DNA from: Octopus bimaculoides
Taxonomy: Eukaryota
Direction: 5' to 3'
Assembly: GCF_001194135.2 (NCBI RefSeq)
Contig: NC_068991.1
Coordinates: forward strand, 67,491,212 to 67,545,901
Length of the DNA: 54,690 bases
Notes under the pieces: generated by a model
Told to the model about the DNA's origin: nothing
Database searches by the model: none
What the model saw: the letters and a program-made list of their open reading frames with translations, nothing else
Shown here: piece after piece, positions 48 through 37,152 of the stretch
Position numbering within the stretch: position 1 is the first letter of the stretch
Layout of the letters: every line of letters begins with the position of its first letter
Position numbers and translations under genes: made by a program

Positions 48-220
48 ATGTAAGTTTTGGCATTATCCCGAAGAAATAAAACTGCCATCAGCAAGTGTGG
101 TTATAGTGTTCCATGATGAATGTTTGTCCCCACTTCTGAGGACCATCCACAGCGTTATTGCTACGTCTCCATCAGCTTTACTCAAGGAGGTTATCTTGAT
201 TGATGCTAACAGTAATAAAG
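48..220 (+). CDS. GALNT7-like: GALNT7-like polypeptide N-acetylgalactosaminyltransferase, first in-window exon (GT-A domain start)
   Basis: ttgcag acceptor and AG|GT donor at 221. Translates [57 protein letters not shown], matching the GalNAc-T pattern CKxWx[23 protein letters not shown]. Missed by the ORF track. Confidence 0.93.
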
Positions 221-409
221 GTTAGCTTCCTGTATTTTGTGTATATATATATATATATGTGTATGTATGTAATTACACACAGAGTCTGTGTGTGTGTTAG
301 TATGCATGCATGTATGTATGTATGTATGTGTGTATATTCACTGCATGATGACCTTTGCTGACTGGTGTAGTTAATGTAGTTAGTGCTGCAATTTCTTTTC
401 TTTTATTTC

Positions 410-1050
410 TTTTACGTCCTTTCAAAGCCTAGCCAGGCTCATGGGCCCGGTTGGACGATTTGACTGAGGACTGGTGCAGCCCAAAGGCTACACCAGGCTC
501 CAATCTGATTTGGCAGAGTTTCTACAGCTGGATGCCCTTCCTAACGCCAACCACTCTGAGAGTGTAGTAGGTGCTTTTACGTGTCACCCGCATGAAGGCC
601 AGTCAGGCGATACTGGCAACGGCCACGCTCAAGATGGTGTATTTTATGTGCCACCCGCACAAGAGCCAGTCCAGGGGCACTGGCAACGATCTCACTCGAA
701 AGTCCTTACACATGCTACAGGCACAAGTGCCAGACAGGTGACGCTGGGCACAGGTGCCATCCCGATTTCGCTTTTGCTTGCCCCAATAAGTCTTTGCAAG
801 CTGAGTTTCGTGTCCAATAAAGCAGACGACGTTGGCACGGGTGCCAGTCATCGAATTTAGTTCGATTTCGATTTCACTTGCCTCNNNNNNNNNNNNNNNN
901 NNNNNNNNNNNNNNNNNNNNNNNNNNNNNNNNNNNNNNNNNNNNNNNNNNNNNNGTTTAGTGTCCAATGAAGGAAAGGTATGCATAAGTGGGCTGGCTAC
1001 ACCCCTGGCAGAGGCCTTGGATTTAGGTCTCACTTGGTCTGCCTGGTTTC
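410..1050 (-). mobile_element. Family B copy
   Basis: Reverse complement of 8330-9090; explains ORFs 474-860 and 603-851. Confidence 0.75.
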
Positions 1051-1306
1051 TATGGCGTATGTGTTCCCCCCAGCTGGACGGGACGCCAGTCCATCGCAGC
1101 GTTACTTAAGAAACAGGAAGAAAGAGTGAGAGAAAGTTGGGGCGAAAGAGTACAGCAGGGGTCGCCACCACCCCTTGCTGGAGCCTCGTGGAGCTTTTAG
1201 GTGTTTGCACTCAATAAACACTCATAACGCTCGGCCTGGGAATCAAAACCGTGATCCTCCAACCGCGAGTCTGCTGCCCTAACCACTGGGCCATTGCGCC
1301 TCCACA
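1050..1306 (-). mobile_element. SINE family C partial/variant copy
   Basis: Reverse complement of the tRNA-like head plus about 200 bp of body shared with 7490-7873. Confidence 0.75.
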
Positions 1307-1629
1307 GTGCTGCAATTTAGCTAAATTAAATCACAACGAGCAACTGCTTTGACTAAATTAGCTAAATTAAGGCGATGAGCTGGCAGAATTGTTAACACTG
1401 GGTAAAATACTTAATAACATTTTGCCCGTCTTTACATTCTGAATTCAAATTCCACCAAAGTTGACTTTAGTTCAAGCCATGCCAGCATGGTAAATGGATA
1501 TTAAATGAGAGCAATGATGAAACTGCCAGAGTTCTTCCAGTTTCTATGCTGATATCTCTTTCATTCAAAATTCTTGCATTTAACTAAGTGGATAATTCTT
1601 ATCATCGTTTTTTGGTACACTCTTTTTAC

Positions 1630-2030
1630 TCTTTACTCTTTTACTTGTTTCAGTCATTTGACTGTGGCCATGCTGGAGCACCGCCTTTAGTCGAGCAAAT
1701 CGACCCCAGGACTTATTCTTTGGAAACCTAGTACTTATTCTATTGGTCTCTTTTTGCCGAACCGCTAAGTTACGGGGACGTAAACACACCAGCATCAGTT
1801 GTCAAGCGATGTTGTGGGGAGGGGGGACAAACACAGACACACAAACATATACACATACATATGTATATACATATATACGACGGGCTTCTTTCAGTTTTCC
1901 GTCTACCAAATCCACTCACAAGGCTTTGGTTGGCCCGAGGCTATAGTAGAAGACACTTGCCCAAGGTGCCATGCAGTGTGACTGAACCCAGAACCATGTG
2001 GTTGGTAAGTAAGCTACTTACCACACACCC
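1630..2030 (-). mobile_element. tRNA-derived SINE family A (CORE-like segment, internal CA/TA microsatellite)
   Basis: Minus-strand head TGTGGTAAGTAGCTT...GGTTCAGTCACACTGCATGGCACCTTGGGCAAGTG; near-identical copies elsewhere in the window. Confidence 0.85.
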
Positions 2031-2189
2031 ATGCCAGTACCTCTGTCAATCATTCCTCTATCTCCACCTTACATGTTCAATTAAAAAGTACGAAGCCCTC
2101 TCTTGTTACTTCAGATCAACAAAAGTGACTGATTTCTTCAATTTTAGACCAAATTTCTAATTCTAATTTTCTAACCTGTTTTATTTCAG

Positions 2190-2400
2190 AAAATTTTACA
2201 ACAGATCTCGTAGAATATATAGAAAACAATTTTAATGACAAAGTGATGCTATCTCATAGCAGCAAGAAAGAAAGTTTGATTCATTTGAAGACAATTGGTG
2301 TTAAATATGCATCTGGAGATGTCATAGTATTTATGGATGCTCCTTGTGAATGTGGTCAGAACTGGTTGGTACCACTTTTAGCCCTGATAGCAACTAACAG
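2190..2400 (+). CDS. GALNT7-like: GALNT7-like exon 2 (DxH region)
   Basis: tttcag acceptor, GT at 2401, phase fits neighbours. ENFTTDLVEYIENNFNDKVMLSHSSKKESLIHLKTIGVKYASGDVIVFMDAPCECGQNWLVPLLALIATNR aligns to G.VIVFLDAHCE...NWL.PLL. Confidence 0.93.
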
Positions 2401-3019
2401 GTAGTGTTATTAATTGTTCAAAAGATGTTTCAATAAAAATAATATCATGAAAAACAACAACAAAGTCATTTTCTTAGAAATGTCTGGCTCCCATTTAAAG
2501 GACTTTTATGATATTGAAAAGGGTTGCTTTTGCAGATTTAACACTTATAGAATCAAAAGGGACCATTCAAGGGTCATTAAGAATTCCTCCATATGGCTGC
2601 TTAGCCTGCAAGAAATAGCAGCAAATACTTCCTCAAATTAAATAATTTCCTTTCTTAATAAAGAAAACATAAACTACATCTAACACATGTTAGACATAGA
2701 TCTTATATATAAAAGCTGGAAACAAACAAACAAACAAACAAAAAAAGGTAGATTGAGGCTGGAATGCTGCTGATTACAGGTGTGTTGATCAAAAAGACCA
2801 AGTGACAGAGTCACTAGAGCTTTAGATTGAATGCTTTGCAATATTCAGTCCAACCCTGGCAGAAACGTTAGCTGGCAGAAATGTTAGTACACCGAGCGAA
2901 ATGCTTTGCGGTATTTTGTCTGTCTTTACGTTTTGAGTTCAAATTCTGCTGAGGTCGACAATGACTGAAACAAGCAATAAAAGGTAAAAGATAAGGTACA
3001 CCAGGGTAGACAGGAGAGA

Positions 3020-3331
3020 TATCATCATCATCACCACCACCACCATCATCGTCATCATCATTATCACCACCACCACCATCATCGTCATCATCATTATCAC
3101 CACCACCACCATCATCGTCATCATCATCATCATCATCATCATCGTCATCACCACCACCACCATCATCGTCATCATCATCATCATCATCGTCATCGTCATC
3201 ATCATCACCACTACCACCACCACCACCACCACCATCATTGTCATCGTCATCGTCATCGTCACCACCACCACCACCACCGCCACTGCCACTGTCATCGTCA
3301 TGGTCGTCGTCGTCATCATCATCATCATCAT
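3020..3331. repeat. Compound (CAT)/(CAC)/(CGT) trinucleotide microsatellite
   Basis: Direct reading; produces spurious poly-D/G, poly-M/V and poly-S/P ORFs. Confidence 0.95.
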
Positions 3332-3537
3332 TTAACATCTGTTGTCCATGCTGGCATGGGTTGGACAGTTTGACCAGGGCTGGCGAGCTGGAAGACTGCA
3401 GCAGACTCCAGTCTGATTTGGCAGGGTTTCTACTCCTGCATGTCTTCCCTAAAGCCAACCACTCCGAGAGAATAATGGGTGCTTTTACGTGCCACCGGCA
3501 TGGCTGCCATTTGCATGACACCAGTATCTGCCACTCT

Positions 3538-3764
3538 TTACTCTTTTACTCTTTAACTTGCTTCAGTCATTTGACTGTGGCCATGCTGGAGCACCGCCTT
3601 TTAGTCGAGCTAATCGACCCCAGGGTTTATTCTTTGTAAGCCTAGTACTTATTCTATTGGTCTCTTTAGCCGAACAGTTAAGTTACGGGGATGTAAACAC
3701 ATCAGCATCGGTTGTCAAGCGATGTTGGAGGGACAAACACAGACACACAAACATATACACACAC

Positions 3765-3798
<34 letters not shown>

Positions 3799-4090
3799 CT
3801 ATATATATNNNNNNNNNNNNNNNNNNNNNNNNNNNNNNNNNNNNNNNNNNNNNNNNNNNNNNNNNNNNNNNNNNNNNNNNNNNNNNNNNNNNATATATAT
3901 ATATATATATACACATATAGATATACATATATACGACGGGCTTCTTTCAGTTTCCATCTACCAAATCCACTCACAAGGCTTTGGTCGGCCCGAGGCTATA
4001 GTAGAAGACACTTGCCCAAGGTGTCACATAGTGGAACTGAACTCGGAACCATGTGGTTCGTAAGCAAGCTACTTACTACACAGCCACTCC
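3538..4090 (-). mobile_element. SINE family A copy
   Basis: Same sequence as 1630-2030; N gap in the internal (TA)n. Confidence 0.85.
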
Positions 4091-4214
4091 TACGCCACAG
4101 ATATGTCTTATATATTTTACAAGATCCTAATTAGGAAGAATATTGTAATGTCACTATATATCTCTTATTGCATAACCCATTTATGGATATTGTCGCACTT
4201 TGAAATATTCTCTT

Positions 4215-4742
4215 CTAGACTAGGCACAAGGCCTGAGATTTTGGGGGAAGGGGCTAGTCGATTAGATTGACCCCAATACAAAACCGGTACTTAATTTATC
4301 AACTCCGAAAGGATGAAAGGCAAAGTCAACCCTGGCGGAATTTGAACTCAGAACATAAAGACAGATGAAATACCATTAAGTTTTTCACCTGGTATGCCAA
4401 CGTTTCTGCCAACTTGCCGCCTTACCCAACAAAGTATTAATTATTCTTTTCTTTTCTAATCTAGGCACAAGGCCCGAAAATTTTGGGGGAGGGAACCAGT
4501 TGATTAGATCAACCCCAGTATACAACTGGTACTTAATTTATCGACCCTGGCGGAATTTGAACTCAGAACGTAAAAACAGATGACATACCGCTAAGCATTT
4601 CACCTGGCATGCTAACGTTTTTGCCAGCTCAACACCTTTAAAAGGATGAAAGGCAAATTTGACTTCGGTGGAATTTGAACTCAGAATGTAAAAACTAACG
4701 AAATGCCGTTAAGTTAAAAATTCTGCCAGCTCATTGCCCCTC
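4215..4742 (-). mobile_element. Cluster of tRNA-derived SINE family D copies
   Basis: Repeated GGTACTTAATTTATCGACCCCGAAAGGATGAAAGGCAAAGTCAACC..GGCGGAATTTGAACTC; further copies at about 2830-2985, 5870-6000, 6081-6290, 6930-7080 and 7190-7370. Confidence 0.75.
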
Positions 4743-4823
4743 ACACTTTGAAATATTAATATACTGTACATTATTTACATTATTTACATTTGATGGATAT
4801 TTGTCCTCATCTTGTTTCTTGTT

Positions 4824-4869
4824 AACACAACGTTTCAGCTGATATACCCTCCTGCCTTCATCAGGTGTC
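4824..4869 (-). ncRNA. Hammerhead ribozyme motif, family 1, weakened stem II
   Basis: Reverse complement GACACCUGAUGAAGGCAGGAGGGUAUAUCAGCUGAAACGUUGUGUU; core intact, one A-A mismatch and one G-U pair in stem II. Confidence 0.65.
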
Positions 4870-4924
4870 TTGGGGAAATTTCAAACCTGGGTTCTCATTC
4901 CTAAGGTATTTTTCGATGTTATTA

Positions 4925-4978
<54 letters not shown>

Positions 4979-5221
4979 TCACTGCCTGGAATCGAACTTG
5001 GAATCTTGGGGTTAGTAGCCCGCGCTCNNNNNNNNNNNNNNNNNNNNNNNNNNNNNNNNNNNNNNNNNNNNNNNNNNNNNNNNNNNNNNNNNNNNNNNNN
5101 NNNNNNNNNNNNNNNNNNNNNNNNNNNNNNNNNNNNNNNNNNNNNNNNNNNNNNNNNNNNNNNNNNNNNNNNNNNNNNNNNNNNNNNNNNNNNNNNNNNN
5201 NNNNNNNNNNNNNNNNNNNNN

Positions 5222-5430
5222 TACATAACAAAAACACCAGGACTTACAAATATATATAACATACAGAAAATTGCACTACTGGGCACTGCACACATCCTAC
5301 GCAAAACACTTTCAATACAGTAACCATAAGAGCATCACAGCAAACCACAGCACATACCCAAGGCACACAGAACTGCGCTCGGTAGTGAAGTGAAAGCATG
5401 CTATAAAAATAAAATTAATGAATAATAATA
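5222..5430 (+). mobile_element. 3' end of an R4/Dong-type (RLE) non-LTR retrotransposon
   Basis: ITKTPGLTNIYNIQKIALLGTAHILRKTLSIQ* is the QK.xLLGT..ILR.xL C-terminus of R4/Dong ORFs; followed by a 3' UTR ending in TAA repeats. Confidence 0.75.
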
Positions 5431-5480
5431 ACATCGGAAAATACCTTAGGAATGAGAACCCAGGTTCGAAATTTCCCCAA

Positions 5481-5523
5481 GACACCTGATGAAGGCTGGA
5501 GGGTATATCAGCTGAAACGTGTT
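5481..5523 (+). ncRNA. Hammerhead ribozyme motif, family 1, probably inactive
   Basis: CUGAUGA...GAAAC present, but a 3-nt deletion relative to the other copies removes the NUH site and stem I 3' strand. Confidence 0.55.
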
Positions 5524-5618
5524 AACAACAAACAAGATGAGGACAAATATCCGTCAAATGTAAATAATGTAAATAATTGTGATTTTATGTAGTTGTTTTC
5601 TTTTTTATTTCTTTGCAG

Positions 5619-5789
5619 AACCATTGTGGCATCTCCAATTGCTAATGCAATTGACTGGGAAACTTTTGCTTACCAGACAAATTCTAGGGAGAAACATCGT
5701 GGTATTTTTGAATGGGGGCTTCTTTATAAAGAGAGTAAAGTGCCAGAAATGGAACTGAAGAGAAGAGAGTACAATAGTGAACCCTATAG
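5619..5789 (+). CDS. GALNT7-like: GALNT7-like exon 3
   Basis: ttgcag/GT boundaries. TIVASPIANAIDWETFAYQTNSREKHRGIFEWGLLYKESKVPEMELKRREYNSEPY; RGIFEWG(L/M)LYKE is typical of the GALNT7/pgant7 subfamily. Confidence 0.93.
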
Positions 5790-6425
5790 GTATCAACTTT
5801 CTTCAAATAACTATTTATTCTCAATTTGATAATAATTGTTTCCTAAAATAAGCATAAAGTCACATATCTTTTGCAAGGCAAGGTACTGCCAATTTACATT
5901 GACTCCAGTGATTAACTGGTACTTATTTGATCCAGTCCCAGAAAAATGAAAGACCAATTTGGCGTTGGCTAGTTTTGAACTCAGAATATAAAGAAAACTG
6001 GAACATATTTTCCAATACATTTTGTTCATTGTATAAATGATTCTACTAATTCACTGCCCTTAATAATAATCCTTTCTACAATAGGCACAAGGCCTTGAAT
6101 TTGTGGGGAAGGGGATAGTCGATTAGATCGACCCCAGTACTTGGCTGGTACTTAATTTATCGACCCCGAAAGCATGAAAGGCAAAGTCAACCTTGGCGGA
6201 ATTTGAACTCAGAATGTAGTGGCAGACAAAATACTGCTAAGCATTTCGCCTGGCGTGCTAGTGATTCTGCCAGCTTGCTGCCTTAAAGACAGACCATAAT
6301 GAATCAATGAACTGCCCTTAATAATAATGGTTTCAAATTTTTGCACAGGATCAACAATTTTTGAGGAGAGCTGGAAGTCAATTATATTGACCCCCAATAC
6401 TCAACTGGTACTTATTGTATCGACT

Positions 6426-6811
6426 CTTTTACTTGTTTCAGTCATTTGACTGCGGCCATGCTGGGGCACCACCTTTAGTCGAGCAAATCGACCCCAGGAC
6501 TTATTCTTTGTAAGCTTAGTACTTATTCTATTGGTCTCTTTTTGCTGAACCGCCAAGTTACGGGGACGCAAACACACCAGCATCGGTCGTCAAGCGAAGC
6601 TGGGGGGACAAACACAGACACACATACATACATATATATATATATATACATATGTATGATGGGCTTCTTTCAGTTTTCGTCTACCAAATCCACTCACAAG
6701 GCTTTGGTCGGCCCGAGGCTATAGTAGAAGACACTTGCCCAAGGTGCCACGCAGTGGGACTGAACCCAGAACCATGTGGTTGGTAAGCAAGCTACTTACC
6801 ACACAGCCACG
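6426..6811 (-). mobile_element. SINE family A copy nested in a family D copy
   Basis: Family D sequence is interrupted at about 6425 and resumes at about 6812. Confidence 0.8.
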
Positions 6812-7489
6812 TAAAGATGACCTAGGAGGAATTTGAGCTCAAGGCATAGAGATGGACAAACTGCTACTAAGTGTGGTAATGATCCTGCCAGTTCGTTGTC
6901 TTAATAACAATAATGGCTTCAAATTTTGGCACAAAGCCAGAAATTCTGGGTGATGAGTCAAGTTGATTACATCAAACTCCAAAGCTCAATTGGTACTTAT
7001 TTTATTAACCCTGGAAGGATGAAAAAGCAAAGTTTACCTCGGCAGAATTTTAACTCAGTTGTTAGAAAAAGTTTGTCTGCTCAGCATGGCCAGAACCAAC
7101 AAAACATGTGGTACCATGGGCAGCAGGTAACAAGCCTGCTACTTCTACGAAATTCCAGGAATCTAACAAAACCTGAGTTAAAAGAATATAATAATGGCTT
7201 CAAATTTCGGCAAAACTGGGACAGGTTGATTGATATCATTGGTCCCAATATTTGACTGGCAATATAGTTTGGTGGCCCCCTGAAGAAGGATAGGCAAATT
7301 TGACCTTAGTCTCATTTGAACCACAGAAAGTAAAGAGCCAAATGAAATACTCCGAAGCATGTCTATCGATGTTCTTCTCACAATAAGTTTAAACATAAGC
7401 ATGGCTTAGCACAGGCAAGGCTATCTGCATGCATGGTTGTTAATAAGTTTGCTCTCCAACCATGTAGCTTTGGGTTTAGTCTTGGAAAA

Positions 7490-7873
7490 GTGGAGGCACA
7501 ATGGCCCAATGGTTAGGGCAGCGGACTCGCGGTCGTAAGATCGCGGTTTCAATTCCCAGACCGGGTGTTGTGAGTGTTTATTGAGCGAAAACACTTAAAA
7601 GCTCCACGAGACTCTGGCAGGGGATGGTGGCGAACCCTGCTGTACTCTTCCACCACAACTTTCTCTCACTCTTACTTCCTGTTTCTGTTGTACCTGTAAT
7701 TCAAAGGGTCAGCCTTGTCACACTGTGTCACGCTGAATCTCCCCGAGAACTACGTTAAGGGTACACATGTCTGTGGAGTGCTCAGCCACTTGCATGTTAA
7801 TTTCACGTGCAGGCTGTTCTGTTGATCAGATCAACTGGAACCCACATCGTCATAAGCGACGGAGTGCCAACAA
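7490..7873 (+). mobile_element. tRNA(Arg)-like-headed SINE family C with 10-bp TSD
   Basis: GTGGAGGCACAATGGCCCAATGGTTAGGGCAGCGGACTCGCGGTCG head (TCG anticodon-like, A/B boxes); TSD TCTTGGAAAA at 7480-7489 and 7874-7883. Confidence 0.85.
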
Positions 7874-8329
7874 TCTTGGAAAAATATTTTCTGCTGTAGT
7901 CCCTAGCTGACCAAAGTCTTTTAGTAGACAGAAACTACACTACTGCAGTATTCAGAATGGAAGGAGGTTATATTATAACATGAGATCACATGATCGACTG
8001 AACTATTGGATGTTGTTAAACATCACTAGTCACAGTGCACTTTGCATCATCTTAGCTTTTGAATGATGCTACCCTGATGGCTAGGCAAGAAGGCCAATAT
8101 TCCACCTGGCTGTAAGGCTACTCCATTGTAGGCTTACCCATTTACAGCTGAATGGATCGGAGCAACTGGAAACGAAGTGTCTTGCTCAAGAACACATTGT
8201 GCTCTTTGTCCTGAAATCATACCCACAATCTAGTGACCATGAGTGCAAAGTCCCAACCGCTAGGCTGTGAACCTTCAGATAATAACACAAGGAAGGTCAT
8301 TTTTGCTGGGTCATATCCGAGGCAATGAC

Positions 8330-9090
8330 TTCTGACTGAGACCTTTGGAAATATGCTGTGTGTGAGAAGACCTGGCAAGCCAAGTGAGACCATAATCCGT
8401 GGCCTCTGCCAGGGGTGTAGCCAGCCCACTTATGTGTACCTTCCTTCATTGGACATTAAACTCCACTTGCGAAGACCTGTTGAAGCAAGTGAAATTGAAA
8501 TCAAATTCGATGACTGGCACCCATGCCAACATCGTCTCCTTCTTTGGACACGAAACTCGGCCTCCAAAGACCTGTTGGGGCAAGCGAAAGCGAAATCGTG
8601 ATGACACCTGTGCCTAGTGTCGCCTTCCTGGCACTTGTGCCAGTGGCACATGTAAAGACATTCGAGCGAGATCGTTGCCAGTGCAACGCTGGACTGGCTC
8701 TTGTGCAGGTCGCACGTAAAATACACCATTTCGAGTGTGGCCGTTGCCAGTACAGCCTGACTGGCTTTCGTGCCGGTGGCACGTAAAAGCACCCACTACA
8801 CTCTCTGAGTGGTTGGCGTTAGGAAGGGCATCCAGCTGTNNNNNNNNNNACCATTTCGAGTGTGGCCGTTGCCAGTACAGCCTGACTGGCTTTCGTGCCG
8901 GTGGCACGTAAAAGCACCCACTACACTCTCTGAGTGGTTGGCGTTAGGAAGGGCATCCAGCTGTAGAAACTCTGCCAAATCAGATTGGAGCCTGGTGTAG
9001 CCATCTGGTTTTCACCAGTCCTCAGTCAAATCGTCCAACCCATGCCAGCATGGAAAGCGGACGTTAAACAACGATGATGATGATGATGAT
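8330..9090 (+). mobile_element. (GAT)n-tailed repeat family B (RTE-type 3' end), long copy
   Basis: ...GGCGTTAGGAAGGGCATCCAGCTGTAGAAACTCTGCC...GCATGGAAAGCGGACGTTAAAC(GAT)n. Assignment to an RTE tail is inference from the microsatellite tail. Confidence 0.7.
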
Positions 9091-9327
9091 ATCTGAGGCC
9101 TGTTTTTTTTTTTTTTTTACTACCCTAAAACCATATATATTTTTTTATCCTTTTGTTAGGAAGGAGGGGCAGTAACCATGGCTTTTCACCTCTTCCTCTT
9201 CATGCCACCACCACCACCACCACCACTACCGTTTTCCTCTCCCCTATCCTTACCCTTGCTGTTTAAATATCTGCTGTTGATAATGTCTTGTTTCATGATG
9301 TAAATCTTGTTGTTTACTGGTGTCCAG

Positions 9328-9445
9328 TTCTCCAATCCTTGCAGGTGGTTTGTTTGCTATAGACAGGGAATATTTCTTTGAACTTGGAGGTTATGACCCA
9401 GGACTTCAGTCACGGGGAGGAGAGAATTTTGAATTGTCTTTCAAG
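9328..9445 (+). CDS. GALNT7-like: GALNT7-like exon 4 (Gal/GalNAc-T motif)
   Basis: gtccag acceptor, AAG|GTAAGT donor. [39 protein letters not shown]. Confidence 0.95.
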
Positions 9446-9475
9446 GTAAGTATTTCTATCAGAAACAAACACACT

Positions 9476-9522
<47 letters not shown>

Positions 9523-9542
9523 CACGCATGCACGCACGCATG

Positions 9543-9576
<34 letters not shown>

Positions 9577-9812
9577 TATTATATATATATATACATATAT
9601 AAACATAATTAAGGGATCAGCAACAGTTGCTTCACCACATACCGAAGTTCAGAAATAGCAGCTAAAATGCTGAGACTCCAACAGATAGCATTACTTACCC
9701 TTTTAATTGTAATAATTATATATATATAAATAAGGATAAGATCGATATTTAAATATCAATTTTATCAAGTGGCCAGCATGGGAATAAAAACCATCAGAGG
9801 TAGCAATTATTT

Positions 9813-10030
9813 AAAATTATAGTTTAGGGTATCTAAGAGATACTGCTATGCTGAAAATAGCAGTCAAATCTTGACTCTAAACCACAATGAATGTTCATAT
9901 GGCACCAGTTTATTTCGTTTCTTCGTCTTCGCTCCTGGTGCCATATGAACATTTATTGTGGTTTAGAGTCAAGATTTGACTGCTATTTTCAGCGTGGCAG
10001 TATCTCTTAGATACCCTAAATTATAATTTT
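9813..10030. repeat. Fold-back palindrome, 96-bp arms, 26-nt loop
   Basis: 9813-9908 vs 9935-10030: 4 mismatches, all transitions; followed by (TA)n. Confidence 0.88.
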
Positions 10031-10926
10031 ATATATATATAGAAAGAGAAAGAGAGTTTAAAGATCTAGTAGAGCTAGAATCAAGAAAAAGAGTATTCCA
10101 TGCAGTGAGAGATTAATATCAATTTAAATACACAACTGAAAGAGCAACTCATAGTTTCATGCTTTTATGATACTTGAACAGGCACAAAGGATTGCTTTAA
10201 GATACATGGCGTATCGAAATCTTTTACGAAATCTTTTATCAGGACATTACTAACGATTTTTAGGAATTTTTTTTTCTAGTGTGTGTATATATACATGTAT
10301 GTATGTATGTATGTATGTATGTTATCAATCAGTTTCATTTCTGTATTTCTTGTCCATAGAGAAAAAGCTGGACTCTAACATATATTCAAGGCTCCGCCAT
10401 TGGAACTTTTATCAACATCATCTAGGTATTTGACTTAGATAATGGAAGCTATTGACTACCTTGTGCTTACCCCACTAGAATTTGATGGAATCTATTTTCT
10501 ATACGTATATACTTATATATATATGAACTGTCAGTTGTTATTTTATGCATAAAATATACATGTGTAACACAGATGTACATATGTAACACATGTATGTACA
10601 TATGTAATACATGTATGTAGCTGTGCATGCATGAATACACACACAGGTGCACACACATACATGTGCGCGCGCGCAAACACTCTCACACATGTACATATGT
10701 ACACAAGCATGGTATGGTTATCCAACTTCTTTAAAGGACAATCACTCTAAATAAGGCTTGACATGGCCCATGACAGCCTCTGCAATCCTGACTAGCATGG
10801 AAAGCAGATGTGAAATGAGTATGTTGATGCTGCTGCTGCTGACGATGATGATGATGATGATGATGATGATATTATATAAAATGCATGGTTGTCTAAAATC
10901 GATTGTATCCTTGTTTTCTTTTCCAG

Positions 10927-11037
10927 ATATGGCAGTGTGGAGGCAGCATAAAGTGGGTCCCATGTTCACATGTTGCACGCATCCATCGATCATCCATGTT
11001 TTTAGGTGCCTCCCAAGATCTCAGTGTTCTTGCTATG
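10927..11037 (+). CDS. GALNT7-like: GALNT7-like exon 5
   Basis: ttccag acceptor. IWQCGGSIKWVPCSHVARIHRSSMFLGASQDLSVLAM. The donor ATG|GTTTGT was chosen because it gives phase 0 into the next exon; the 3' boundary is less certain. Confidence 0.88.
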
Positions 11038-11239
11038 GTTTGTATCTGTTATTGTAGATAAACATTACTGTTTAGTTCCAGTGAAAAACTGGGGTTAATT
11101 TGATCAGCCATAATGTCCCTCCTTCTATACCAGTGACAATGGTAGAAACTAATATTTAAAGACAGTGCAGTAAACTGCATATTTTATTCATAAACATCAA
11201 TTTCTAATTGTTTGCAAATAACGTTTATCATCGTGATTG

Positions 11240-11725
11240 AACCAAATTCGATGACTGGCACCTGTGCCAGTGGAGCGCTAAGAGCACCGTCCGAGCGTGA
11301 TCATTGCCAGAGCAGCTGTCTAGCTTCCGTGTCAGTGGCACGTAAATAGCACCATTTGAGCGTGATCGTCACCAGCGTCGCCTTGTTGGCACTTGTGCCA
11401 GTGGCACGTGAAAAACATTTGTGTGAGGTCATTGCCAGTGCCACTGGACTGGCTCCTGTGCAGGTGGCACGTAAAAAACACCATTTTGAGCATGGCCGTT
11501 GCCAGTACTGCCTGACTGGCCCTTGTGCCGGTGGCACGTAAAAGCACCCACTACACTTTTGGAGTGGTTGGCGTTAGGAAGGGCATCCAGCTGTAGAAAC
11601 TCTGCCAGATCAGATTGGAGCCTGGTGCAGCCTTCTGGTTCACCAGTCCTCAGTCAAATCATCCAACCCATGCTAGCATGGAAAGCAGACGTTAAACAAT
11701 GATGATGATGATGATGATCATGATG
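11240..11725 (+). mobile_element. Family B copy
   Basis: Same body and (GAT)n tail as 8330-9090. Confidence 0.75.
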
Positions 11726-12110
11726 ATGTTGGTTTCATTGGCCTTAGAGGATCTTCAAAGACCATAAGTTAACCTTTTAGAAGTGGGTGAGCTTTAGAAG
11801 CAGATGAGTTTTCCTAATTCCATTTAGAAGTTGATTACTGGCTGCTATAGTAGCTGGTGATGAAATTTGGGCTCTCTTTGTTATTCTCACAAGAAATTTA
11901 AAAACAAAGAATTTAAGACATTAAGAGAGTTATTACATTACATGTTATCACACCATAATTCATCAGCTCATAAACTGTAATATCATAAGTAATGACATCA
12001 CTAGCTATTCACTTCACATGGCTGTCGCATCATCACCTGTGACATGAAATGTTACATCGTAGCTAATCACACCCTAGCCTGTTATATGCCATGGAGTCAC
12101 ATCATAGTCA

Positions 12111-12236
12111 CATCATAGTCCCTCACGTCATAATCCCTCACATCATAGTCCCTCACATCATAGTCCCTCACATCATAGTCCCTTACATCATAGTCCCTCA
12201 CATCATAGTCCCTCACATCGTAGTCCCTCACATCAT
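12111..12236. repeat. 15-bp minisatellite (CATCATAGTCCCTCA) x ~8
   Basis: Direct reading; source of the spurious PHIIV ORF. Confidence 0.9.
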
Positions 12237-12490
12237 ATGCTGTTACAGCATTAACTTGATAATGTCATATTGTTATATCATAGTTCCTCACATTATATGC
12301 TGTTGCATCACATCCAGTTACATTATAAGATATATGTCATGTTGTTAGATCACAGCTCCTTGCATGATAACCTATTACATTGCATATTGTTAAAATGCAC
12401 TTGATTACACAACAGGCTCTTACATAACACCATCTTATCACCATTTCCTCCAGGAAAGCTAACATCTAACCCTTTAAATTGTTTACTCAG

Positions 12491-12712
12491 GATTACATAC
12501 GAGTTGTTGAAGTGTGGCTGGACAATGAACACAAACGGTATTTCTATGCGAGACAACCTTTAATGGAAGAATATCCTTATCTTAACATTACCAAACAATT
12601 GGAATTTAAGAAGGAACACAATTGTAAGAGCTTCGAATGGTTTCTGAAGAATGTAGCCTATGAAGTACTGGACTATTATCCCCCACAGCCTCCTAATAAA
12701 TATTGGGGCCAG
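12491..12712 (+). CDS. GALNT7-like: GALNT7-like exon 6 (end of catalytic domain and linker)
   Basis: ctcag acceptor, CAG|GTAAGT donor. DYIRVVEVWLDNEHKRYFYARQP...KKEHNCKSFEWFLKNVAYEVLDYYPPQPPNKYWGQ matches NY.RV.EVW.D....YFY and C(K)SF.WF. Confidence 0.94.
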
Positions 12713-12745
12713 GTAAGTATTCAGATTAGTCTTCATACTATACTC

Positions 12746-13145
12746 TTACTCTTTACTCTTTTACTTGTTTCAGTCATTTGACTGTGGCCATGCTGGAGCA
12801 CCACCTTTAGTCAAGCAAATCGACCCCGGGACTTATTCTTTGTAAGCCTAGTACTTATTCTATTGGTCTCTTTTGCCGAACTGCTAAGTTACGGGGACGT
12901 AAACACACCAGCATCGGTTGTCAAGCAATGTTAGGGAGACAAACACAGACACACAAACACACACACACATATATATATACATATATACGACGGGCTTCTT
13001 TCAGTTTCCGTCTACCAAATCCACTAACAAGGCTTTGGTCGGCCCGAGGCTATAGTAGAAGACACTTGCCCAAGATGCCATGCAGTGGGACTGAACCCGG
13101 AACCATGTGGTTGGTAAGCAAGCTACTTACCACTCAGCCACTCCT
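12746..13145 (-). mobile_element. SINE family A copy
   Basis: Full-length match to the other copies; begins about 30 nt after the GALNT exon 6 donor. Confidence 0.85.
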
Positions 13146-13369
13146 GCACCTATATGTACCTTTTGTAAGTATGTGATAGATGGTTTCAGGTACAGTTCAG
13201 GTAGATGCAGTGGCATGACACCTTGGGCAAATGTCTGCTACTAATAACTCAGGGATGACTAAGAGCTTGTGAGAGGATTTGTAGCCTGTCATATATATGT
13301 ATGTGCTATCCAGTATTATACATACTTCCGGGTTTACATTTGGGCTTCTGTCATGTGTGAATAGATAAA

Positions 13370-13852
13370 TGAAAAAATTGGAGTCAACAAGAAGGAGTAC
13401 GGTTGGACATTTAGTTTCAGTCACTACAATTGTTTCTATGCAACGTAGTTCTCCAGGCATGCAGGTACTTGGTTATGTAACCACTTCCCTGCATTATATC
13501 TAGCTGTGTTTCCTCAGGCGATATGTAAATATTGTCTCCGTAAGTTCAAATTCTCAGCCTTAAGATCATCCTCTCTGTCAGTCATGGCCTGAAGTTCGTA
13601 GTAGCCACTGAGTTTATCTAGGTGGTTTGTTGCTGAAGGACTATTGGCAAGAGGATGCTCTTGAAGCCAAGTGTTTGAACTTACAGAGACAATATTTACA
13701 CATCGCCTGAGGAAACACAACTAGATCTCATAATGCAGGGAAATATTGCATAATCAAGTACCTGAATGCCTGGCGAACCACGTTGCATAGAAACAATTGT
13801 AGTGATTGAAATTAAATGTCCAACTTTACTCCTTGTTGTTTCCAATTTTTTC
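13370..13852. mobile_element. Fold-back element, ~180-bp imperfect inverted arms, 123-bp spacer
   Basis: 13370-13550 is the reverse complement of 13674-13852 (e.g. TTGGACATTTAGTTTCAGTCACTACAATTGTTTCTATGCAACG); abuts a (TATG)n/(TA)n tract. Confidence 0.8.
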
Positions 13853-13924
13853 AATTGTATGTATGTATGTTTGTATGTTTGTATGTATGTATGTATGTAT
13901 GTATGTATGTATGTATATGTACAT

Positions 13925-14032
<108 letters not shown>

Positions 14033-14171
14033 GTGTGAGTGAATACATATATATATATATATATATATGTATATACATATATATGTATATATATATATGA
14101 ATGTATGTATGTATATGTATGTATCGCTTGCTTGCTCCGTCTGTCTATCTCTCTCTCTATATATATGTATA

Positions 14172-14717
14172 CTAGCTTAAAAGCTATAGTCTATGTGGAC
14201 TTATAAGCTAGCTCCTGTGGAGGGTCACTGGGCCTGTGGCCCAAAACTAAAGAGAGCTAAATAGTATGCCTATAATACATCTATAATGACTATATGCCCC
14301 AGTGGTGTTTGATCAGAGGTTAAGGATGGATGAGAATTAATTCTGCAATGCAATCATTTTATTGTTCCAGTCCCAAGTTGAATTCCAGCTGTTGTACAAT
14401 TTGTCCCAAAGTTCTTACCTTGACGTAAAATTAATGAAGCGAATGTGATTTATCTCCCCCTTAATCTCTGATGTCATCTGACAGTCACCAACCAAGATGG
14501 TGTGAATCAGCAAGGCTTTACCAGCTAGAAATAATAACTCAAATCCTTTTAAGTCAGATCCCAATGCTGGATGTTCAAGAACCAAACAAAGGGCAGACTT
14601 TCAGTTCTGGGATCATCCTGATTCCAAAAAGGTATATTGTGTCAATGTAGAGGAAATGTAGTCTGAGATACAAGGATCCCGGACAGACTGACAGAATTTC
14701 ACTTTTATTATTATAGA
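14172..14717 (-). mobile_element. Probable non-autonomous Helitron
   Basis: Minus strand starts A|TCTATAATAATAAAAGTGAAATTCTGTCAGTCTGTC and ends CTAG|T. The GC hairpin GGGCC-ACA-GGCCC (14230-14242) lies farther from the 3' end than usual. Confidence 0.45.
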
Positions 14718-15362
14718 TAATACACAATACTATATGTACCTTTTGTAAGTATGCGATAGATGGTTTCAGGTACAGCTCCCTGTTGGGTTTTTTTTTCCTA
14801 AAAGATTTTCCTAAGAGATTTCCCAGTTCATGTTGGGTTTTTTTTTTCCTAAAAGATTTTTCATATTTCCTTGTAAGTCCTTTATGCTTCGTTTTGGAAT
14901 AATAGTGTCCGTAAATCCTATTATTCTTCTATTATTCTTCTAATCATAACGTCCGCTTTCCATGCTAGCATGGGTTGGACGATTTGACTGGGGACTGGCA
15001 AACCAGATGGCTACACCAGACTCTAATCTGATTTGGCAGAGTTTCTACAGCTGGATGCCCTTCCTAACACCAACCACTCCGAGAGTGTAGTGGGTGCTTA
15101 GATATAAAATTATACTATGATAAGTTTTGGTGAGTTTTTTTGGTATATTTAAAAGGCCATTTGAAGGATATTTGGCTGTCATTACTTGCAGGTGAGTGAA
15201 TATGTCAGGAACGTTTCTCTTTGGTGCATGAAATGGAATTTTGGGGTATGTAAACTGTTAAGTATCTGGTTATTGAGTTGCTTCTGTTGTATTATATTTT
15301 TGATCAAGCATCTTACTCACATCTTTTCTTATAGTAAATACCTATTATTGTCTGTCATTCAG

Positions 15363-15464
15363 GTTATGTTGGAAAAAACTGGAGATTGTAGTAACTGGCA
15401 GGCATCATCTGTTGGAGAAAAAACTATTCGTATGAGTCCTTGCAAGTCCGACAAAGGAAACCAG
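15363..15464 (+). CDS. GALNT7-like: GALNT7-like exon 7 (ricin-B lectin alpha repeat)
   Basis: ttcag/GTAAC boundaries, phase 0. VMLEKTGDCSNWQASSVGEKTIRMSPCKSDKGNQ with the C...C....GNQ lectin pattern. Confidence 0.85.
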
Positions 15465-15682
15465 GTAACAGTGACAGTATACATTATGATTTATTAATTA
15501 CAGATATGCTGACAGTTTTATTTTATTGCTATAATCTAGGTACAGGCATAGCTGTGTGGTAAGAAGCTTGCTTGCTTCTCAATCACATGGTTCTGAGTTC
15601 AATCCCACTGCATGGCATCATAGGCATGGTTGACCCAAGCTTTGCAAGTGGGTTTGGTAGACAGAGACTGAAAGAAGCCTGT

Positions 15683-15724
<42 letters not shown>

Positions 15725-15857
15725 AATTCTCTAATTCTCTAAAACAGGACACAGTCGTGTGTCGATAAGCCAGCTGGAGGAGATGTCCTCCTGGGGCTAA
15801 AAGCAACAGTAACATCCACCCCTAGGGGTCAGCCACACTTAAGTGGCAATATACTAC

Positions 15858-15902
<45 letters not shown>

Positions 15903-16002
15903 GCATGTATGTATGTATGTATTTATGCGTGTCGGTATTTGTTCCCCTGCCATCACTTGACAACCAATGCTGTATATATGTATGTATTTGGTTCTTTTAC
16001 AG

Positions 16003-16125
16003 CTGTTTCGGTTAAATATGAAAGGTCAATTGATATGGGATGAGTTCTGCATTGAAACAATAAACGATATTTTACACATACAAGAGTGTCCTGTCCAACC
16101 TGTTGGTAACTGGTCCTATCTAGAG
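16003..16125 (+). CDS. GALNT7-like: GALNT7-like exon 8 (lectin beta repeat)
   Basis: ttacag/GTAAG boundaries. LFRLNMKGQLIWDEFCIETINDILHIQECPVQPVGNWSYLE matches LFRLN..GQL....C. Confidence 0.9.
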
Positions 16126-17088
16126 GTAAGCTGATATTTTAACATACTGCTTTACATAATCTTTGTAATGGTTTCTGTTCATTTGTGTTGATTTAAAAGA
16201 CAAAATGGAGCCTGGGCAGCCCTCCAGCTGACCACTTCCGGTCAAACCATCCAAGTACGGAGAACAGACCTTAAACAATGATGATGATGATGATGCTGAT
16301 AATGATGATGATGATCATGTGGTTTTCTTTAAATCAATGCTTTACTACATTATTATACTACAACACAACACATACAATACTACACTATCACAGTGCATAC
16401 TACATCACTATACTGTAACATATACAGCACCACTGTACTGTAGTATATAGAGCATCACTGTACTGAAAGGCAGAAGGTTATCGCAACCCTGCGTCATCAT
16501 CGTTTAACGTCCGCTTTCCATGCTAGCATGGGTTGGATGATTTGACTGAGGACTGGCGAACCAGATGGCTACACCAGGCTCCAATCTGATCTGGCAGAGT
16601 TTCTACAGCTGGATGCCCTTCCTAATGCCAACCACTTTGAGAGTGTAATGGGTGCTTTTACATGCCACCGGCACGGGTGCCATTTGTGTGGCACTGGTAT
16701 CTACCACGACTGCGATTCTGCTCGGCTCGATGGCTCTTTTTCTCAAGCATGACATGCATATACATATATATGTATTCAACCATGTATGTATGTATGTATG
16801 CATGCATATATGTATGTGTGTGTGTTTTCATGTATGTACGTGTACACACACACACATACACACAGACACACACACATATATGTATACAGCATTTTAGTTA
16901 GTTTCCATTTCTCAAATCTGTGGAACTGAGCCTGGAACCACGTGGTTGGAAGGCAAATTTCTTACCAAGAACCCACATCTATGGCCTTGAATCTATGGTA
17001 AGACAGCAGACCCCCCCACTCTAAAATATTTGTCCTCCCCACCCATCTCCATCAACCTAAATGTCTTTTTTCTTTTATTTCCTCCTAG

Positions 17089-17388
17089 AATACAAAACAA
17101 ATTTTCAACAGTCGTTTCCAAAAATGTGTTGAAGTGGTATCAAACTCTGTACTTTGTCTCAAAGACTGTGATGCTAACAACAAGATGCAGCAATGGAATT
17201 TTAAGAAATTTAAGGCCTGGGATATTCCTAAACAACAACAACAACAACAACAGCAGCCTCAACAACAACAACAACAACAAGAACAGAAGCCTCAACAACA
17301 ACAACAACAACAACAGCAGCAGCAACCTCAACAACAAGAACAACAACAGCCTCAACAACAACAACAACAACAACAACAACAGCAGCAG
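17089..17388 (+). CDS. GALNT7-like: GALNT7-like exon 9 (lectin gamma repeat + poly-Gln tail; runs into assembly gap, stop not seen)
   Basis: cctag acceptor. NTKQIFNSRFQKCVEVVSNSVLCLKDCDANNKMQQWNFKKFKAWDIPK, then in-frame CAA/CAG-rich codons up to the N gap at 17389. Confidence 0.88.
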
Positions 17389-35720: not shown

Positions 35721-35777
35721 TACAAAACATATTCTGCAGGGCAATTTGTAAGGGTACATAAGGGTGTGTTAGCATAC

Positions 35778-37062: not shown

Positions 37063-37152
37063 CATGTTCTTCGGTGTATGCACCAGCACTAACTAATCTC
37101 CAAGACGATGATATAGCCATGCCAAGGGGTGGAGTTATGGTCCAGTGATGAC
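37063..37152 (-). CDS. TECPR2: TECPR2 exon 9 (90 nt; not in ORF track)
   Basis: ctaccag acceptor, G|GTAAGT donor, phase 1/1. GHHWTITPPLGMAISSSWRLVSAGAYTEEH. Confidence 0.85.

What the first reader, a model, noticed from the sequence alone, without database searches (positions are those of the whole stretch)
48..11037. GALNT7-like gene with an intact frame but a dismantled active site: candidate GalNAc-T pseudoenzyme
Seen in sequence: nine exons splice in phase with no stop over about 510 codons. Yet DxH reads D-A-P (GAT GCT CCT, 2336-2344), PCSRVGH reads PCSHVAR (His to Arg, CGC 10978-10980) and WGGEN reads RGGEN (CGG 9413-9415). Other donor-binding motifs also differ: FHNE to FHDE, VDDxS to IDANS, REGLIRxR to KESLIHLK, PIID to PIAN. 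Established: GalNAc-Ts bind Mn2+ through the Asp and His of DxH plus a distal His (D224/H226/H359 in human T2), and the WGGEN Trp (W331) engages UDP-GalNAc. Inference: the structural scaffold ([26 protein letters not shown]) is well kept while catalytic residues in five exons are lost. That pattern suggests selection for a non-catalytic role (glycan/peptide sensor, scaffold or dominant-negative regulator of O-glycosylation) rather than decay. None of the three key changes can be reversed by cephalopod A-to-I editing, because they would need C-to-A, G-to-A or C-to-U.
Basis: partly seen in the sequence, partly recalled or inferred. Interest (0 to 1): 0.88.

Follow-up and report, generated by a model that had tools for sequence, protein, structure and literature searches.

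The report
Catalytically dead octopus GALNT7 parental copy
This Octopus bimaculoides gene is the old, intron-bearing copy of the O-glycosylation enzyme GALNT7; it has lost its active-site residues and changes its protein sequence almost as fast as non-coding DNA, yet three octopus species keep its reading frame open, while an intronless copy keeps the normal enzyme.

Summary
Nine exons (48 to 17388, + strand) splice in frame into exactly 510 stop-free codons. They encode XP_014776901.1, best matched by human GalNAc-T7. The codons are as reported: DAP, RGGEN and PCSHVAR. All four flagged gaps lie in introns.

O. sinensis and O. vulgaris orthologues keep DAH but carry Trp-to-Gln and distal His-to-Tyr. 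The Trp was therefore lost before the species split, and the His residues were lost independently afterwards.

- dN/dS between O. bimaculoides and O. sinensis is about 1 (ML 1.26, roughly 0.8-2.0). It is 0.05-0.08 for the intact octopus paralogue and 0.13-0.27 for the same gene in Sepia.
- 27 of 150 family-invariant positions are changed, including the lectin alpha-site Asp. The scaffold is eroding too.
- It is still not a plain dead pseudogene. There are no stops (P about 0.002), no frameshifts (P about 3e-5) and all splice sites are kept. Conserved sites change less (p = 0.004), and replacements are conservative (p = 0.007).

The intact paralogue is intronless in every coleoid checked. The window gene keeps scallop intron positions, so it is the parental gene of an old retrocopy.

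Best reading: a catalytically dead, weakly constrained GalNAc-T-like protein. Expression was not tested.

The parts
48..220 (+). Coding exon, first in the window (residues 153-209 of XP_052827964.1). Carries FHDE (109-120; the family-invariant Asn is now Asp) and IDANS (199-213; the second Asp of VDD is now Ala, GCT 205-207).
2190..2400 (+). Coding exon. Carries KKESLIHLK (2264-2290; Lys 2288-2290 replaces the equivalent of GalNAc-T2 Arg208) and D-A-P in place of the DxH metal motif (2336-2344; CCT 2342-2344).
   Evidence: residue roles from PMC4388629 and PMC13071866
5619..5789 (+). Coding exon with PIANAIDW (5635-5655). The O. sinensis orthologue has a 3-nt in-frame insertion in this exon.
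9328..9445 (+). Coding exon holding the Gal/GalNAc-T motif. AGGLFAID is kept (9341-9364). Arg CGG (9413-9415) stands in place of the WGGEN Trp.
10927..11037 (+). Coding exon. CGGS is kept. PCSHVAR has Arg CGC (10978-10980) in place of the distal Mn2+-binding His. The region equivalent to the start of the flexible loop is degenerate (10981-11004; the Tyr367 equivalent is Leu).
12491..12712 (+). Coding exon covering the end of the catalytic domain and the linker (VVEVWLD ... NCKSF ... YWGQ). This is the most conserved stretch between octopus species (local omega about 0.34).
15363..15464 (+). Coding exon for lectin subdomain alpha. The conserved Asp is now Asn (AAC 15393-15395), and HxxGGNQ is now KSDKGNQ (15444-15464).
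16003..16125 (+). Coding exon for lectin subdomain beta. The O. sinensis and O. vulgaris orthologues have a 9-nt in-frame duplication at its start.
17089..17388 (+). Last mapped coding exon, for lectin subdomain gamma. The ancestral stop after ..AWK is gone (GAT ATT CCT AAA follows Trp 17218-17220). From about 17227 the frame runs into a CAA-rich 30-33-nt minisatellite (Gln-rich tail), which is cut by the assembly gap at 17389-18115.
885..954 (.). Assembly gap inside intron 1 of the window. No effect on the coding sequence.
3809..3892 (.). Assembly gap inside intron 2, within a TA/CA microsatellite.
5028..5221 (.). Assembly gap inside intron 2.
8725..8964 (.). The 10-N gap (8840-8849) in intron 3, flanked by a perfect 115-nt duplicate. 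This is an unmerged contig overlap.

Best explanation
The window holds the last nine coding exons of the ancestral, intron-bearing GALNT7 gene of coleoid cephalopods, here called copy B.

History (inferred from the comparisons below):
- An old intronless retrocopy, copy A, carries the normal enzyme in octopods and decapods.
- In the Octopus lineage copy B lost catalysis. The common ancestor of O. bimaculoides and O. sinensis/vulgaris had already lost the WGGEN Trp, the Arg208 equivalent, the FHNE Asn and the lectin alpha-site Asp.
- The metal-binding His residues were then lost independently. O. bimaculoides lost both. O. sinensis and O. vulgaris lost only the distal one.

Present state (shown):
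- Amino-acid changes accumulate at about the local neutral rate.
- Mutations that would break the reading frame or the splice sites are still absent.
- Conserved core positions still change about half as often as variable ones.

Most likely nature (inferred): a type II membrane protein with a GalNAc-T fold that can no longer bind Mn2+ and UDP-GalNAc. Any remaining role would be non-catalytic and weakly constrained, for example a protein-protein role in the secretory pathway. Expression and any function remain unshown.
For: Identity and orthology:
- The translation is 100% identical to XP_014776901.1. Human GalNAc-T7 (6IWQ) matches at E = 1e-122. Pfam finds GT2, Glyco_transf_7C and Ricin_B domains.
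- The O. sinensis (L001) and O. vulgaris (L002) loci have the same nine exons. There are 27 collinear intron matches and the same TECPR2-like neighbour.

Catalytic loss:
- Obim CCT (Pro), CGG (Arg), CGC (Arg). Osin CAT (His), CAG (Gln), TAC (Tyr).
- TGG to CAG must pass through CGG or a stop codon, so the Trp was lost in the common ancestor.
- CAC to CGC and CAC to TAC are independent single steps from His.
- Residue roles are documented for GalNAc-T2.

Relaxed constraint:
- 101 of 457 residues differ between Obim and Osin. dN is 0.115-0.126 and dS 0.097-0.127. Differences by codon position are 54/57/38.
- GY94 maximum likelihood gives omega 1.26. Omega of 0.8 or less is rejected, and omega = 1 is not.
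- Ovul against Osin shows 14 non-synonymous and 4 synonymous changes.
- Intron mismatch is p = 0.098 against 0.109 in the coding sequence.
- Controls: copy A between Obim and Ovul has omega 0.05-0.08, with codon positions 20/8/98. Copy B between two Sepia species has omega 0.13-0.27 at a similar dS.
- 27 (Obim) and 25 (Osin) of 150 family-invariant positions are changed. Sepia B has 0, octopus A has 0-1, and the family median is 0.

Frame still selected:
- About 5.9 stops are expected under neutral substitution. P(none) = 0.002.
- 14.4 indels and 10.5 frameshifts are expected from the intron indel rate. Two in-frame indels are seen. P(no frameshift) = 2.8e-5.
- All splice dinucleotides are kept, P = 0.037.
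- Omega is 0.83 at conserved sites and 1.50 at variable sites, LRT p = 0.004. dN is 0.076 against 0.172, p = 2e-4.
- Replacements are more conservative than random, p = 0.007.

Retrocopy:
- Copy A is a single-exon coding sequence in O. bimaculoides, O. vulgaris, Argonauta hians and a sequence that groups with the non-octopod copy-A proteins.
- Sepia copy B spans 130 kb.
- Octopus copy B exon junctions coincide with those of Pecten maximus GALNT7.
- Octopus B and Sepia B form a clade with 96% bootstrap support.
Against: - Overall omega is indistinguishable from 1, which is what a dead gene gives.
- No transcript of octopus copy B turned up among the Logan run assemblies, while Sepia copy B has 21 transcript contigs. 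However, the searches that could have found fragments were insensitive.
- Omega at conserved sites is not significantly below 1 on its own (p = 0.47).
- The lectin sugar site is degenerate as well, and the ancestral stop codon is lost. Both look like general decay.
- Only three species, two of them very close, are available.
- Loss of catalysis is inferred from residues, not measured.
Confidence: 0.55

Rival explanations
1. It is a non-functional unprocessed pseudogene. After the retrocopy took over, the parental gene died. Its frame is open in three species only because death was recent or by luck.
For: - Omega is about 1, the coding rate equals the intron rate, and third codon positions are not enriched for changes.
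- Catalytic residues, lectin-site residues and the stop codon are all lost.
- No Logan transcript clusters with octopus copy B.
Against: - Under neutrality about 6 stops and about 10 frameshifts are expected on the Obim-Osin path alone. None is seen (P = 0.002 and 2.8e-5).
- Splice sites are intact in all three species.
- Omega differs between site classes (p = 0.004), and replacements are conservative (p = 0.007).
- The Trp loss predates the species split, so the relaxed period is longer than the path tested.
Confidence: 0.25
2. It is a neofunctionalised, fast-evolving non-catalytic protein under positive selection. The GalNAc-T fold has been reused for a new binding role, and a long Gln-rich tail was gained through loss of the stop codon.
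For: - Omega is 1.5-1.7 at family-variable sites (p = 0.05-0.07).
- O. sinensis has a burst of 5 replacements (7 base changes, none synonymous) within 8 codons of lectin subdomain alpha.
- All three species share the stop loss and the read-through into a Gln-rich repeat; the tail is about 260 to 335 residues in the two gap-free assemblies.
- The frame is kept.
Against: - Omega above 1 is not significant.
- A (CAA)n repeat has no stop in any frame, so the tail needs no selection to stay open.
- The end of the tail is frame-shifted between O. sinensis and O. vulgaris.
- There is no expression evidence.
Confidence: 0.15
3. It is still an active GalNAc-transferase that uses alternative residues.
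For: The fold-defining motifs are kept ([16 protein letters not shown]). O. sinensis and O. vulgaris keep DAH.
Against: - O. bimaculoides has lost two of the three Mn2+ ligands.
- All three species lack the Trp331 equivalent, and their Arg208 and Tyr367 equivalents are replaced by Lys and Leu. These residues are described as essential or transition-state-stabilising in GalNAc-T2.
- The different replacements in sister lineages argue against a new working solution.
Confidence: 0.03
4. The changed codons are assembly errors in the O. bimaculoides draft.
For: The window is a gap-rich draft. The His-to-Pro change is seen only in this species, and the newer annotation reuses the same assembly.
Against: - Independent O. 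sinensis and O. vulgaris assemblies are altered at two of the three same positions.
- 101 further differences show the same relaxed pattern.
- The sites lie in unique, non-repetitive exon sequence, far from the gaps.
Confidence: 0.02

Closest known systems
Human and animal GalNAc-T7 (GALNT7; CAZy family GT27; PDB 6IWQ/6IWR)
   Same: It is the best sequence match (E = 1.4e-122, aligned over nearly the whole catalytic and lectin region). The domain order is the same: GT-A domain, Gal/GalNAc-T motif, ricin-type lectin. The intron positions match those of scallop GALNT7.
   Different: The DxH His, the WGGEN Trp, the distal His, the Arg208 and Tyr367 equivalents and the lectin alpha Asp are all replaced. 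27 of 150 family-invariant positions are changed. The stop codon is lost, with read-through into a Gln-rich repeat.
GALNTL5 (mammalian GalNAc-T-like protein without transferase activity)
   Same: It is a member of the GalNAc-T family that is reported to have no glycosyltransferase activity yet is functional: it interacts with ER chaperones and has sperm-surface roles (PMC11655647, PMC12443989). It is the known precedent for a non-catalytic family member.
   Different: From my own knowledge, not tested here: GALNTL5 is a vertebrate gene that lacks the lectin domain, and it has a clear knockout phenotype. The octopus gene keeps a degenerate lectin domain, arose separately from the GALNT7 lineage, evolves at omega about 1, and has no known expression or phenotype.
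Retrogene replacement and 'orphan' retrogenes
   Same: An intronless copy under strong purifying selection carries the ancestral function, while the multi-exon parental copy degenerates. The concept is described in PMC5803294 and PMC3548309.
   Different: The parental gene has not been lost or visibly disabled. It is intact and constrained in Sepia. In Octopus it is catalytically dead but keeps an open frame. This is an intermediate state rather than a completed replacement.
Cephalopod GALNT7 copy A (XP_052833021.1 in O. bimaculoides)
   Same: It is a paralogue in the same genome and the same family, about 55% identical to the window gene. It has all canonical motifs.
   Different: It has a single-exon coding sequence, omega of 0.05-0.08, 96% identity between octopus species and 0-1 deviations at invariant positions.

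Membership tests
GT27 polypeptide GalNAc-transferase (by homology) | GT-A catalytic domain with a Gal/GalNAc-T motif region, homologous to solved GalNAc-Ts | tested here: met
   6IWQ matches at E = 1.4e-122. PF00535 scores 70 bits and PF02709 26 bits, both above their cut-offs.
GT27 polypeptide GalNAc-transferase (by homology) | C-terminal ricin-type (beta-trefoil) lectin domain | tested here: met
   PF00652 scores 43.8 bits against a cut-off of 29. However, the alpha-subdomain Asp is replaced by Asn (15393-15395).
Active GalNAc-transferase | DxH motif (Asp224 and His226 of GalNAc-T2) that binds Mn2+ | tested here: not met
   D-A-P at 2336-2344. O. sinensis and O. vulgaris keep D-A-H.
Active GalNAc-transferase | Distal Mn2+-binding His (His359 of GalNAc-T2) | tested here: not met
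   Arg CGC at 10978-10980. It is Tyr in O. sinensis and O. vulgaris.
Active GalNAc-transferase | Trp of WGGEN (Trp331 of GalNAc-T2), which contacts GalNAc and the leaving phosphate | tested here: not met
   Arg CGG at 9413-9415. It is Gln CAG in O. sinensis and O. vulgaris. Role taken from PMC4388629.
Active GalNAc-transferase | Transfer of GalNAc from UDP-GalNAc to Ser/Thr | not testable with these tools
   Needs a recombinant enzyme assay.
Pseudoenzyme (a conserved, functional, non-catalytic homologue) | Catalytic residues lost while the protein stays under purifying selection | tested here: inconclusive
   Catalytic residues are lost. Overall omega is about 1. Yet the frame and splice sites are kept beyond chance, and constraint differs between site classes.
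Pseudoenzyme (a conserved, functional, non-catalytic homologue) | Expressed as a protein | not tested
   No read-level or proteome data are reachable. No Logan transcript was found, but the searches were insensitive.
Unprocessed pseudogene | Frame-disrupting lesions (stop codons, frameshifts, broken splice sites) | tested here: not met
   None in 457-510 codons and 8 introns, in three species.
Unprocessed pseudogene | Neutral substitution pattern (dN/dS about 1) | tested here: met
   Omega is 0.9-1.3. The coding rate equals the intron rate.
Retrogene replacement | An intronless paralogue with an intact, constrained coding sequence, and a multi-exon parent with ancestral intron positions | tested here: met
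   Copy A has a single-exon coding sequence in four cephalopod genome assemblies, with omega 0.05-0.08. Copy B junctions equal the Pecten junctions.
Retrogene replacement | Retroposition hallmarks at the retrocopy (poly-A remnant, target-site duplications) | not tested
   The event is old, predating the split between the octopod and the other copy-A sequences, so such traces are unlikely to survive. The flanks were not examined for them.

The most novel reading that the evidence does not exclude
The dead parental GALNT7 copy has become a new, fast-evolving non-catalytic secretory-pathway protein in Octopus. On this reading its GalNAc-T fold is under diversifying selection at surface positions. 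It has also gained a Gln-rich tail through loss of the stop codon (about 260 to 335 residues where the assembly is complete), which gives it a lineage-specific binding or scaffolding role.
Probability: 0.15. Interest if true: 0.65.

Novelty: new member of a known kind. Interest (0 to 1): 0.4.

Why it matters
Non-catalytic members of the GalNAc-T family are known (GALNTL5), and replacement of parental genes by retrocopies is known. This locus shows both processes together and caught midway: an ancient retrocopy keeps O-glycosylation going, while the parental gene, still intact and constrained in cuttlefish, has lost catalysis in Octopus but not its reading frame.

It is a clean natural case for asking what keeps a dead enzyme's frame open. 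It is also a caution for annotation, because the gene is currently named 'N-acetylgalactosaminyltransferase 7' as if it were active.

It does not make a long-standing question newly testable, and its function, if any, is unknown.

Tried and rejected
- **Short homologue search.** A second search used only the lectin region (131 aa) to look for octopod transcripts. It returned nothing, not even the gene's own protein, so the word index is too sparse for short queries.
- **Chimeric homologue search.** A third search used a stem-plus-lectin query. It found only the O. vulgaris model. Expression could therefore not be assessed, and the negative result carries little weight.
- **Global alignment of intron flanks.** Fixed 250-nt intron flanks gave inflated, noisy divergence (p = 0.18 with many forced gaps). 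I replaced this with a collinear chain of local alignments.
- **Copy A dS as the neutral yardstick.** It is 0.17-0.32, against 0.10-0.13 for copy B, and would give omega of about 0.4-0.7 for copy B. I preferred the local intron rate at the copy B locus, because the flanks of copy A are also more divergent.
- **Three-class codon model.** It did not converge cleanly, so only the two-class result is used.
- **Structure prediction.** Not run. It cannot place Mn2+ or UDP, and it would be driven by the canonical homologues.
- **tRNA scan.** It found nothing.
- **Literature.** No paper mentions octopus together with GALNT7.

Full report
**What is in the window**

The window is Octopus bimaculoides DNA. 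On the + strand, nine exons have canonical AG and GT borders: 48-220, 2190-2400, 5619-5789, 9328-9445, 10927-11037, 12491-12712, 15363-15464, 16003-16125 and 17089-17388. Read from base 49 they join into exactly 510 codons without a stop, up to the assembly gap at 17389.

The translation is 100% identical to XP_014776901.1, 'N-acetylgalactosaminyltransferase 7-like'. The newer model XP_052827964.1 adds an N-terminal hydrophobic anchor encoded upstream of the window. The best solved relative is human GalNAc-T7 (6IWQ, E = 1.4e-122), aligned without breaks across every exon junction. Pfam finds the GT2, Glyco_transf_7C and ricin-lectin domains, but with lower scores than in the intact paralogue (70 against 110 bits, and 44 against 60 bits).

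**Gaps**

The four gaps flagged by the scan's program lie in introns. The gap-free O. sinensis (L001) and O. vulgaris (L002) loci carry the same nine exons, one to one and in the same phases, with no extra exon. The coding sequence is therefore continuous. The 10-N gap at 8840-8849 sits between two perfect 115-nt copies, which is an unmerged contig overlap.

**The reported codons**

- D-A-P is GAT GCT CCT at 2336-2344.
- Arg CGG at 9413-9415 replaces the WGGEN Trp.
- Arg CGC at 10978-10980 replaces the distal His.
[22 protein letters not shown] and NCKSF are kept.

In GalNAc-T2, Asp224, His226 and His359 hold the Mn2+ ion. Trp331 contacts GalNAc and the leaving phosphate. Arg208 and Glu334 bind GalNAc, and Arg362 and Tyr367 bind the diphosphate (PMC4432651, PMC13071866, PMC4388629). 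By motif register, the Arg208 equivalent is Lys (2288-2290) and the Tyr367 equivalent is Leu in all three octopus orthologues. The Arg362 equivalent is Gln in O. sinensis. The A-to-I editing argument is correct, because none of the three reversions is an A-to-G change.

**Orthologues and the order of events**

O. sinensis and O. vulgaris keep D-A-H but have Gln (CAG) at the Trp site and Tyr (TAC) at the distal His site.

- A change from TGG to CAG must pass through CGG, the O. bimaculoides state, or through a stop codon. The Trp was therefore already lost in the common ancestor.
- CGC and TAC are each one step from CAC, so the distal His was lost twice, independently.
- The lectin alpha-site Asp is Asn in O. 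bimaculoides and O. vulgaris, and Tyr in O. sinensis.

Repeated, different hits on the remaining catalytic residues are what relaxed selection on catalysis predicts. Because independent assemblies are altered at the same positions, assembly error is an unlikely explanation for two of the three sites.

**Rate of evolution**

Between O. bimaculoides and O. sinensis, over 457 aligned codons:
- 101 residues differ.
- dN is 0.115-0.126 and dS is 0.097-0.127, giving omega of 0.9-1.3.
- Differences by codon position are 54/57/38.
- A pairwise GY94 fit gives omega 1.26. Values of 0.8 or less and of 2.0 or more are rejected, and omega = 1 is not (p = 0.27).

O. vulgaris against O. sinensis shows 14 non-synonymous and 4 synonymous changes. 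A collinear chain of 6015 aligned intron columns gives p = 0.098, against 0.109 in the coding sequence.

Two controls:
- The intact paralogue (copy A) between O. bimaculoides and O. vulgaris has omega 0.05-0.08, codon-position counts of 20/8/98, and 14 of 458 residues differing in the homologous part.
- The same gene lineage (copy B) between two Sepia species has omega 0.13-0.27 at a similar dS.

Of the 150 positions that are at least 95% conserved in 117 GALNT7 homologues, 27 (O. bimaculoides) and 25 (O. sinensis) are changed. Sepia copy B has 0, octopus copy A has 0-1, and the family median is 0. The changes are spread over the catalytic and lectin domains.

**Still not a plain dead pseudogene**

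- Starting from either sequence, 160 random substitutions with the observed transition bias give about 5.9 stop codons. Only 0.2% of simulations stay open.
- The introns carry 63 indels in 6015 columns, 73% of them not multiples of three. That predicts 14.4 indels and 10.5 frameshifts in the 1371-nt coding sequence. Two are seen (3 and 9 nt), and both are in frame. P(no frameshift) = 2.8e-5.
- All 32 splice dinucleotide positions are unchanged (P = 0.037), and O. vulgaris is intact as well.
- dN is 0.076 at family-conserved positions and 0.172 at variable ones (p = 2e-4). A two-class codon model gives omega of 0.83 against 1.50 (LRT p = 0.004).
- Replacements are more conservative than random single-step changes (mean BLOSUM62 +0.12 against -0.35, p = 0.007).

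Together these results reject strict neutrality since the species split. They say that frame-breaking mutations, and to a lesser degree radical changes in the core, have been removed. Omega above 1 at variable sites is only marginal (p = 0.05-0.07).

**Origin**

Cephalopods have two GALNT7 copies.
- Copy A has a single uninterrupted coding exon in O. bimaculoides, O. vulgaris, Argonauta hians and an ENA assembly whose protein groups with the non-octopod copy-A sequences.
- Copy B is multi-exon. The Sepia gene spans 130 kb. The octopus exon junctions project exactly onto those of scallop GALNT7.

In a neighbour-joining tree, octopus B groups with Sepia B (96% bootstrap) on a very long branch, and copy A forms its own clade (100%). 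Sepia B is closer to cephalopod A (about 72% identity) than to other molluscs (about 67%). I infer that A is an old retrocopy of B, made before the octopod and the other (presumably decapod) lineages split. B stayed a constrained, expressed enzyme in Sepia, where 21 transcript contigs encode it in full. In Octopus it became dispensable as an enzyme. This corresponds to 'retrogene replacement' caught midway (PMC5803294, PMC3548309).

**C-terminus**

The ancestral ...AWK-stop ending seen in Sepia is gone in all three octopus species. The frame runs into a CAA-rich minisatellite with a 30-33-nt period. The last exon has 308 codons in O. sinensis and 383 in O. vulgaris. In the window it is cut by the gap at 17389-18115. 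A (CAA)n tract has no stop in any frame, so this tail needs no selection to stay open.

**Comparison with what is known**

The closest functional precedent is mammalian GALNTL5, a GalNAc-T-like protein without transferase activity that has real roles in sperm (PMC11655647, PMC12443989). The octopus gene differs from it in several ways: it has a separate origin, it keeps a (degenerate) lectin domain, it evolves at a near-neutral rate, and no expression or phenotype is known. No paper links octopus and GALNT7.

**Verdict**

- Best explanation (0.55): a catalytically dead, weakly constrained parental copy whose frame is still under selection.
- Main rival (0.25): a pseudogene that has not yet been hit by a disabling mutation.
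- More novel reading (0.15): a neofunctionalised, fast-evolving protein with a Gln-rich tail.
- Expression and activity are untested and would decide between these readings.

Noticed in passing
window 35665-52871, minus strand: Exons of a convergent neighbouring gene with HPS5 beta-propeller and tectonin/Hyd_WA repeats (TECPR2-like). The same neighbour lies downstream of the O. vulgaris orthologue, which confirms synteny. It includes a long 558-codon exon (45834-47510) with no Pfam match.
   Followed up: partly
window 17227-17388 and gap 17389-18115; L001 53710-54695: The GALNT7-like frame reads into a CAA-rich minisatellite with a 30-33-nt period (units such as KQPEQQQQQQ). The last exon differs in length between O. 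sinensis (308 codons) and O. vulgaris (383). The end of the tail is frame-shifted in O. sinensis, where it reads as Thr-rich.
   Followed up: partly
L001 46076-46177 against L002 53126-53227 (orthologues of window exon 15363-15464): O. sinensis carries 5 amino-acid replacements (7 base changes, none synonymous) within 8 codons of lectin subdomain alpha, compared with O. vulgaris and O. bimaculoides. Exon-plus-flank identity here is 93.8%, against 97.4-99.6% for the other exons. This could be a mutation cluster, a conversion tract, positive selection or a local assembly problem.
   Followed up: no
L003, L004, L005, L006 (copy A loci): The canonical cephalopod GALNT7 paralogue has an intronless coding sequence in all four genome assemblies checked (three octopods and one unnamed ENA assembly). 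It appears to be an ancient functional retrogene.
   Followed up: yes
window 1648-1685, 3561-3598, 6436-6473, 12768-12805: Four copies of the same interspersed repeat lie in the introns, in the same orientation, each followed by a CA/TA microsatellite. Several assembly gaps sit in or next to such repeats. ARAGORN finds no tRNA-like gene in the window.
   Followed up: partly
window 23655-23849: Both NCBI gene models for O. bimaculoides end in ...CGEFVLKVRKLEKL, taken from an ORF about 6 kb downstream of the Gln-rich repeat. This is probably a modelling device to bridge the gap and reach a stop codon. The O. sinensis and O. vulgaris loci instead reach a stop at the end of the repeat.
   Followed up: no
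L001 1690-7956, minus strand: A Helitron-like N-terminal domain ORF (540 aa) lies upstream of the O. sinensis orthologue.
   Followed up: no
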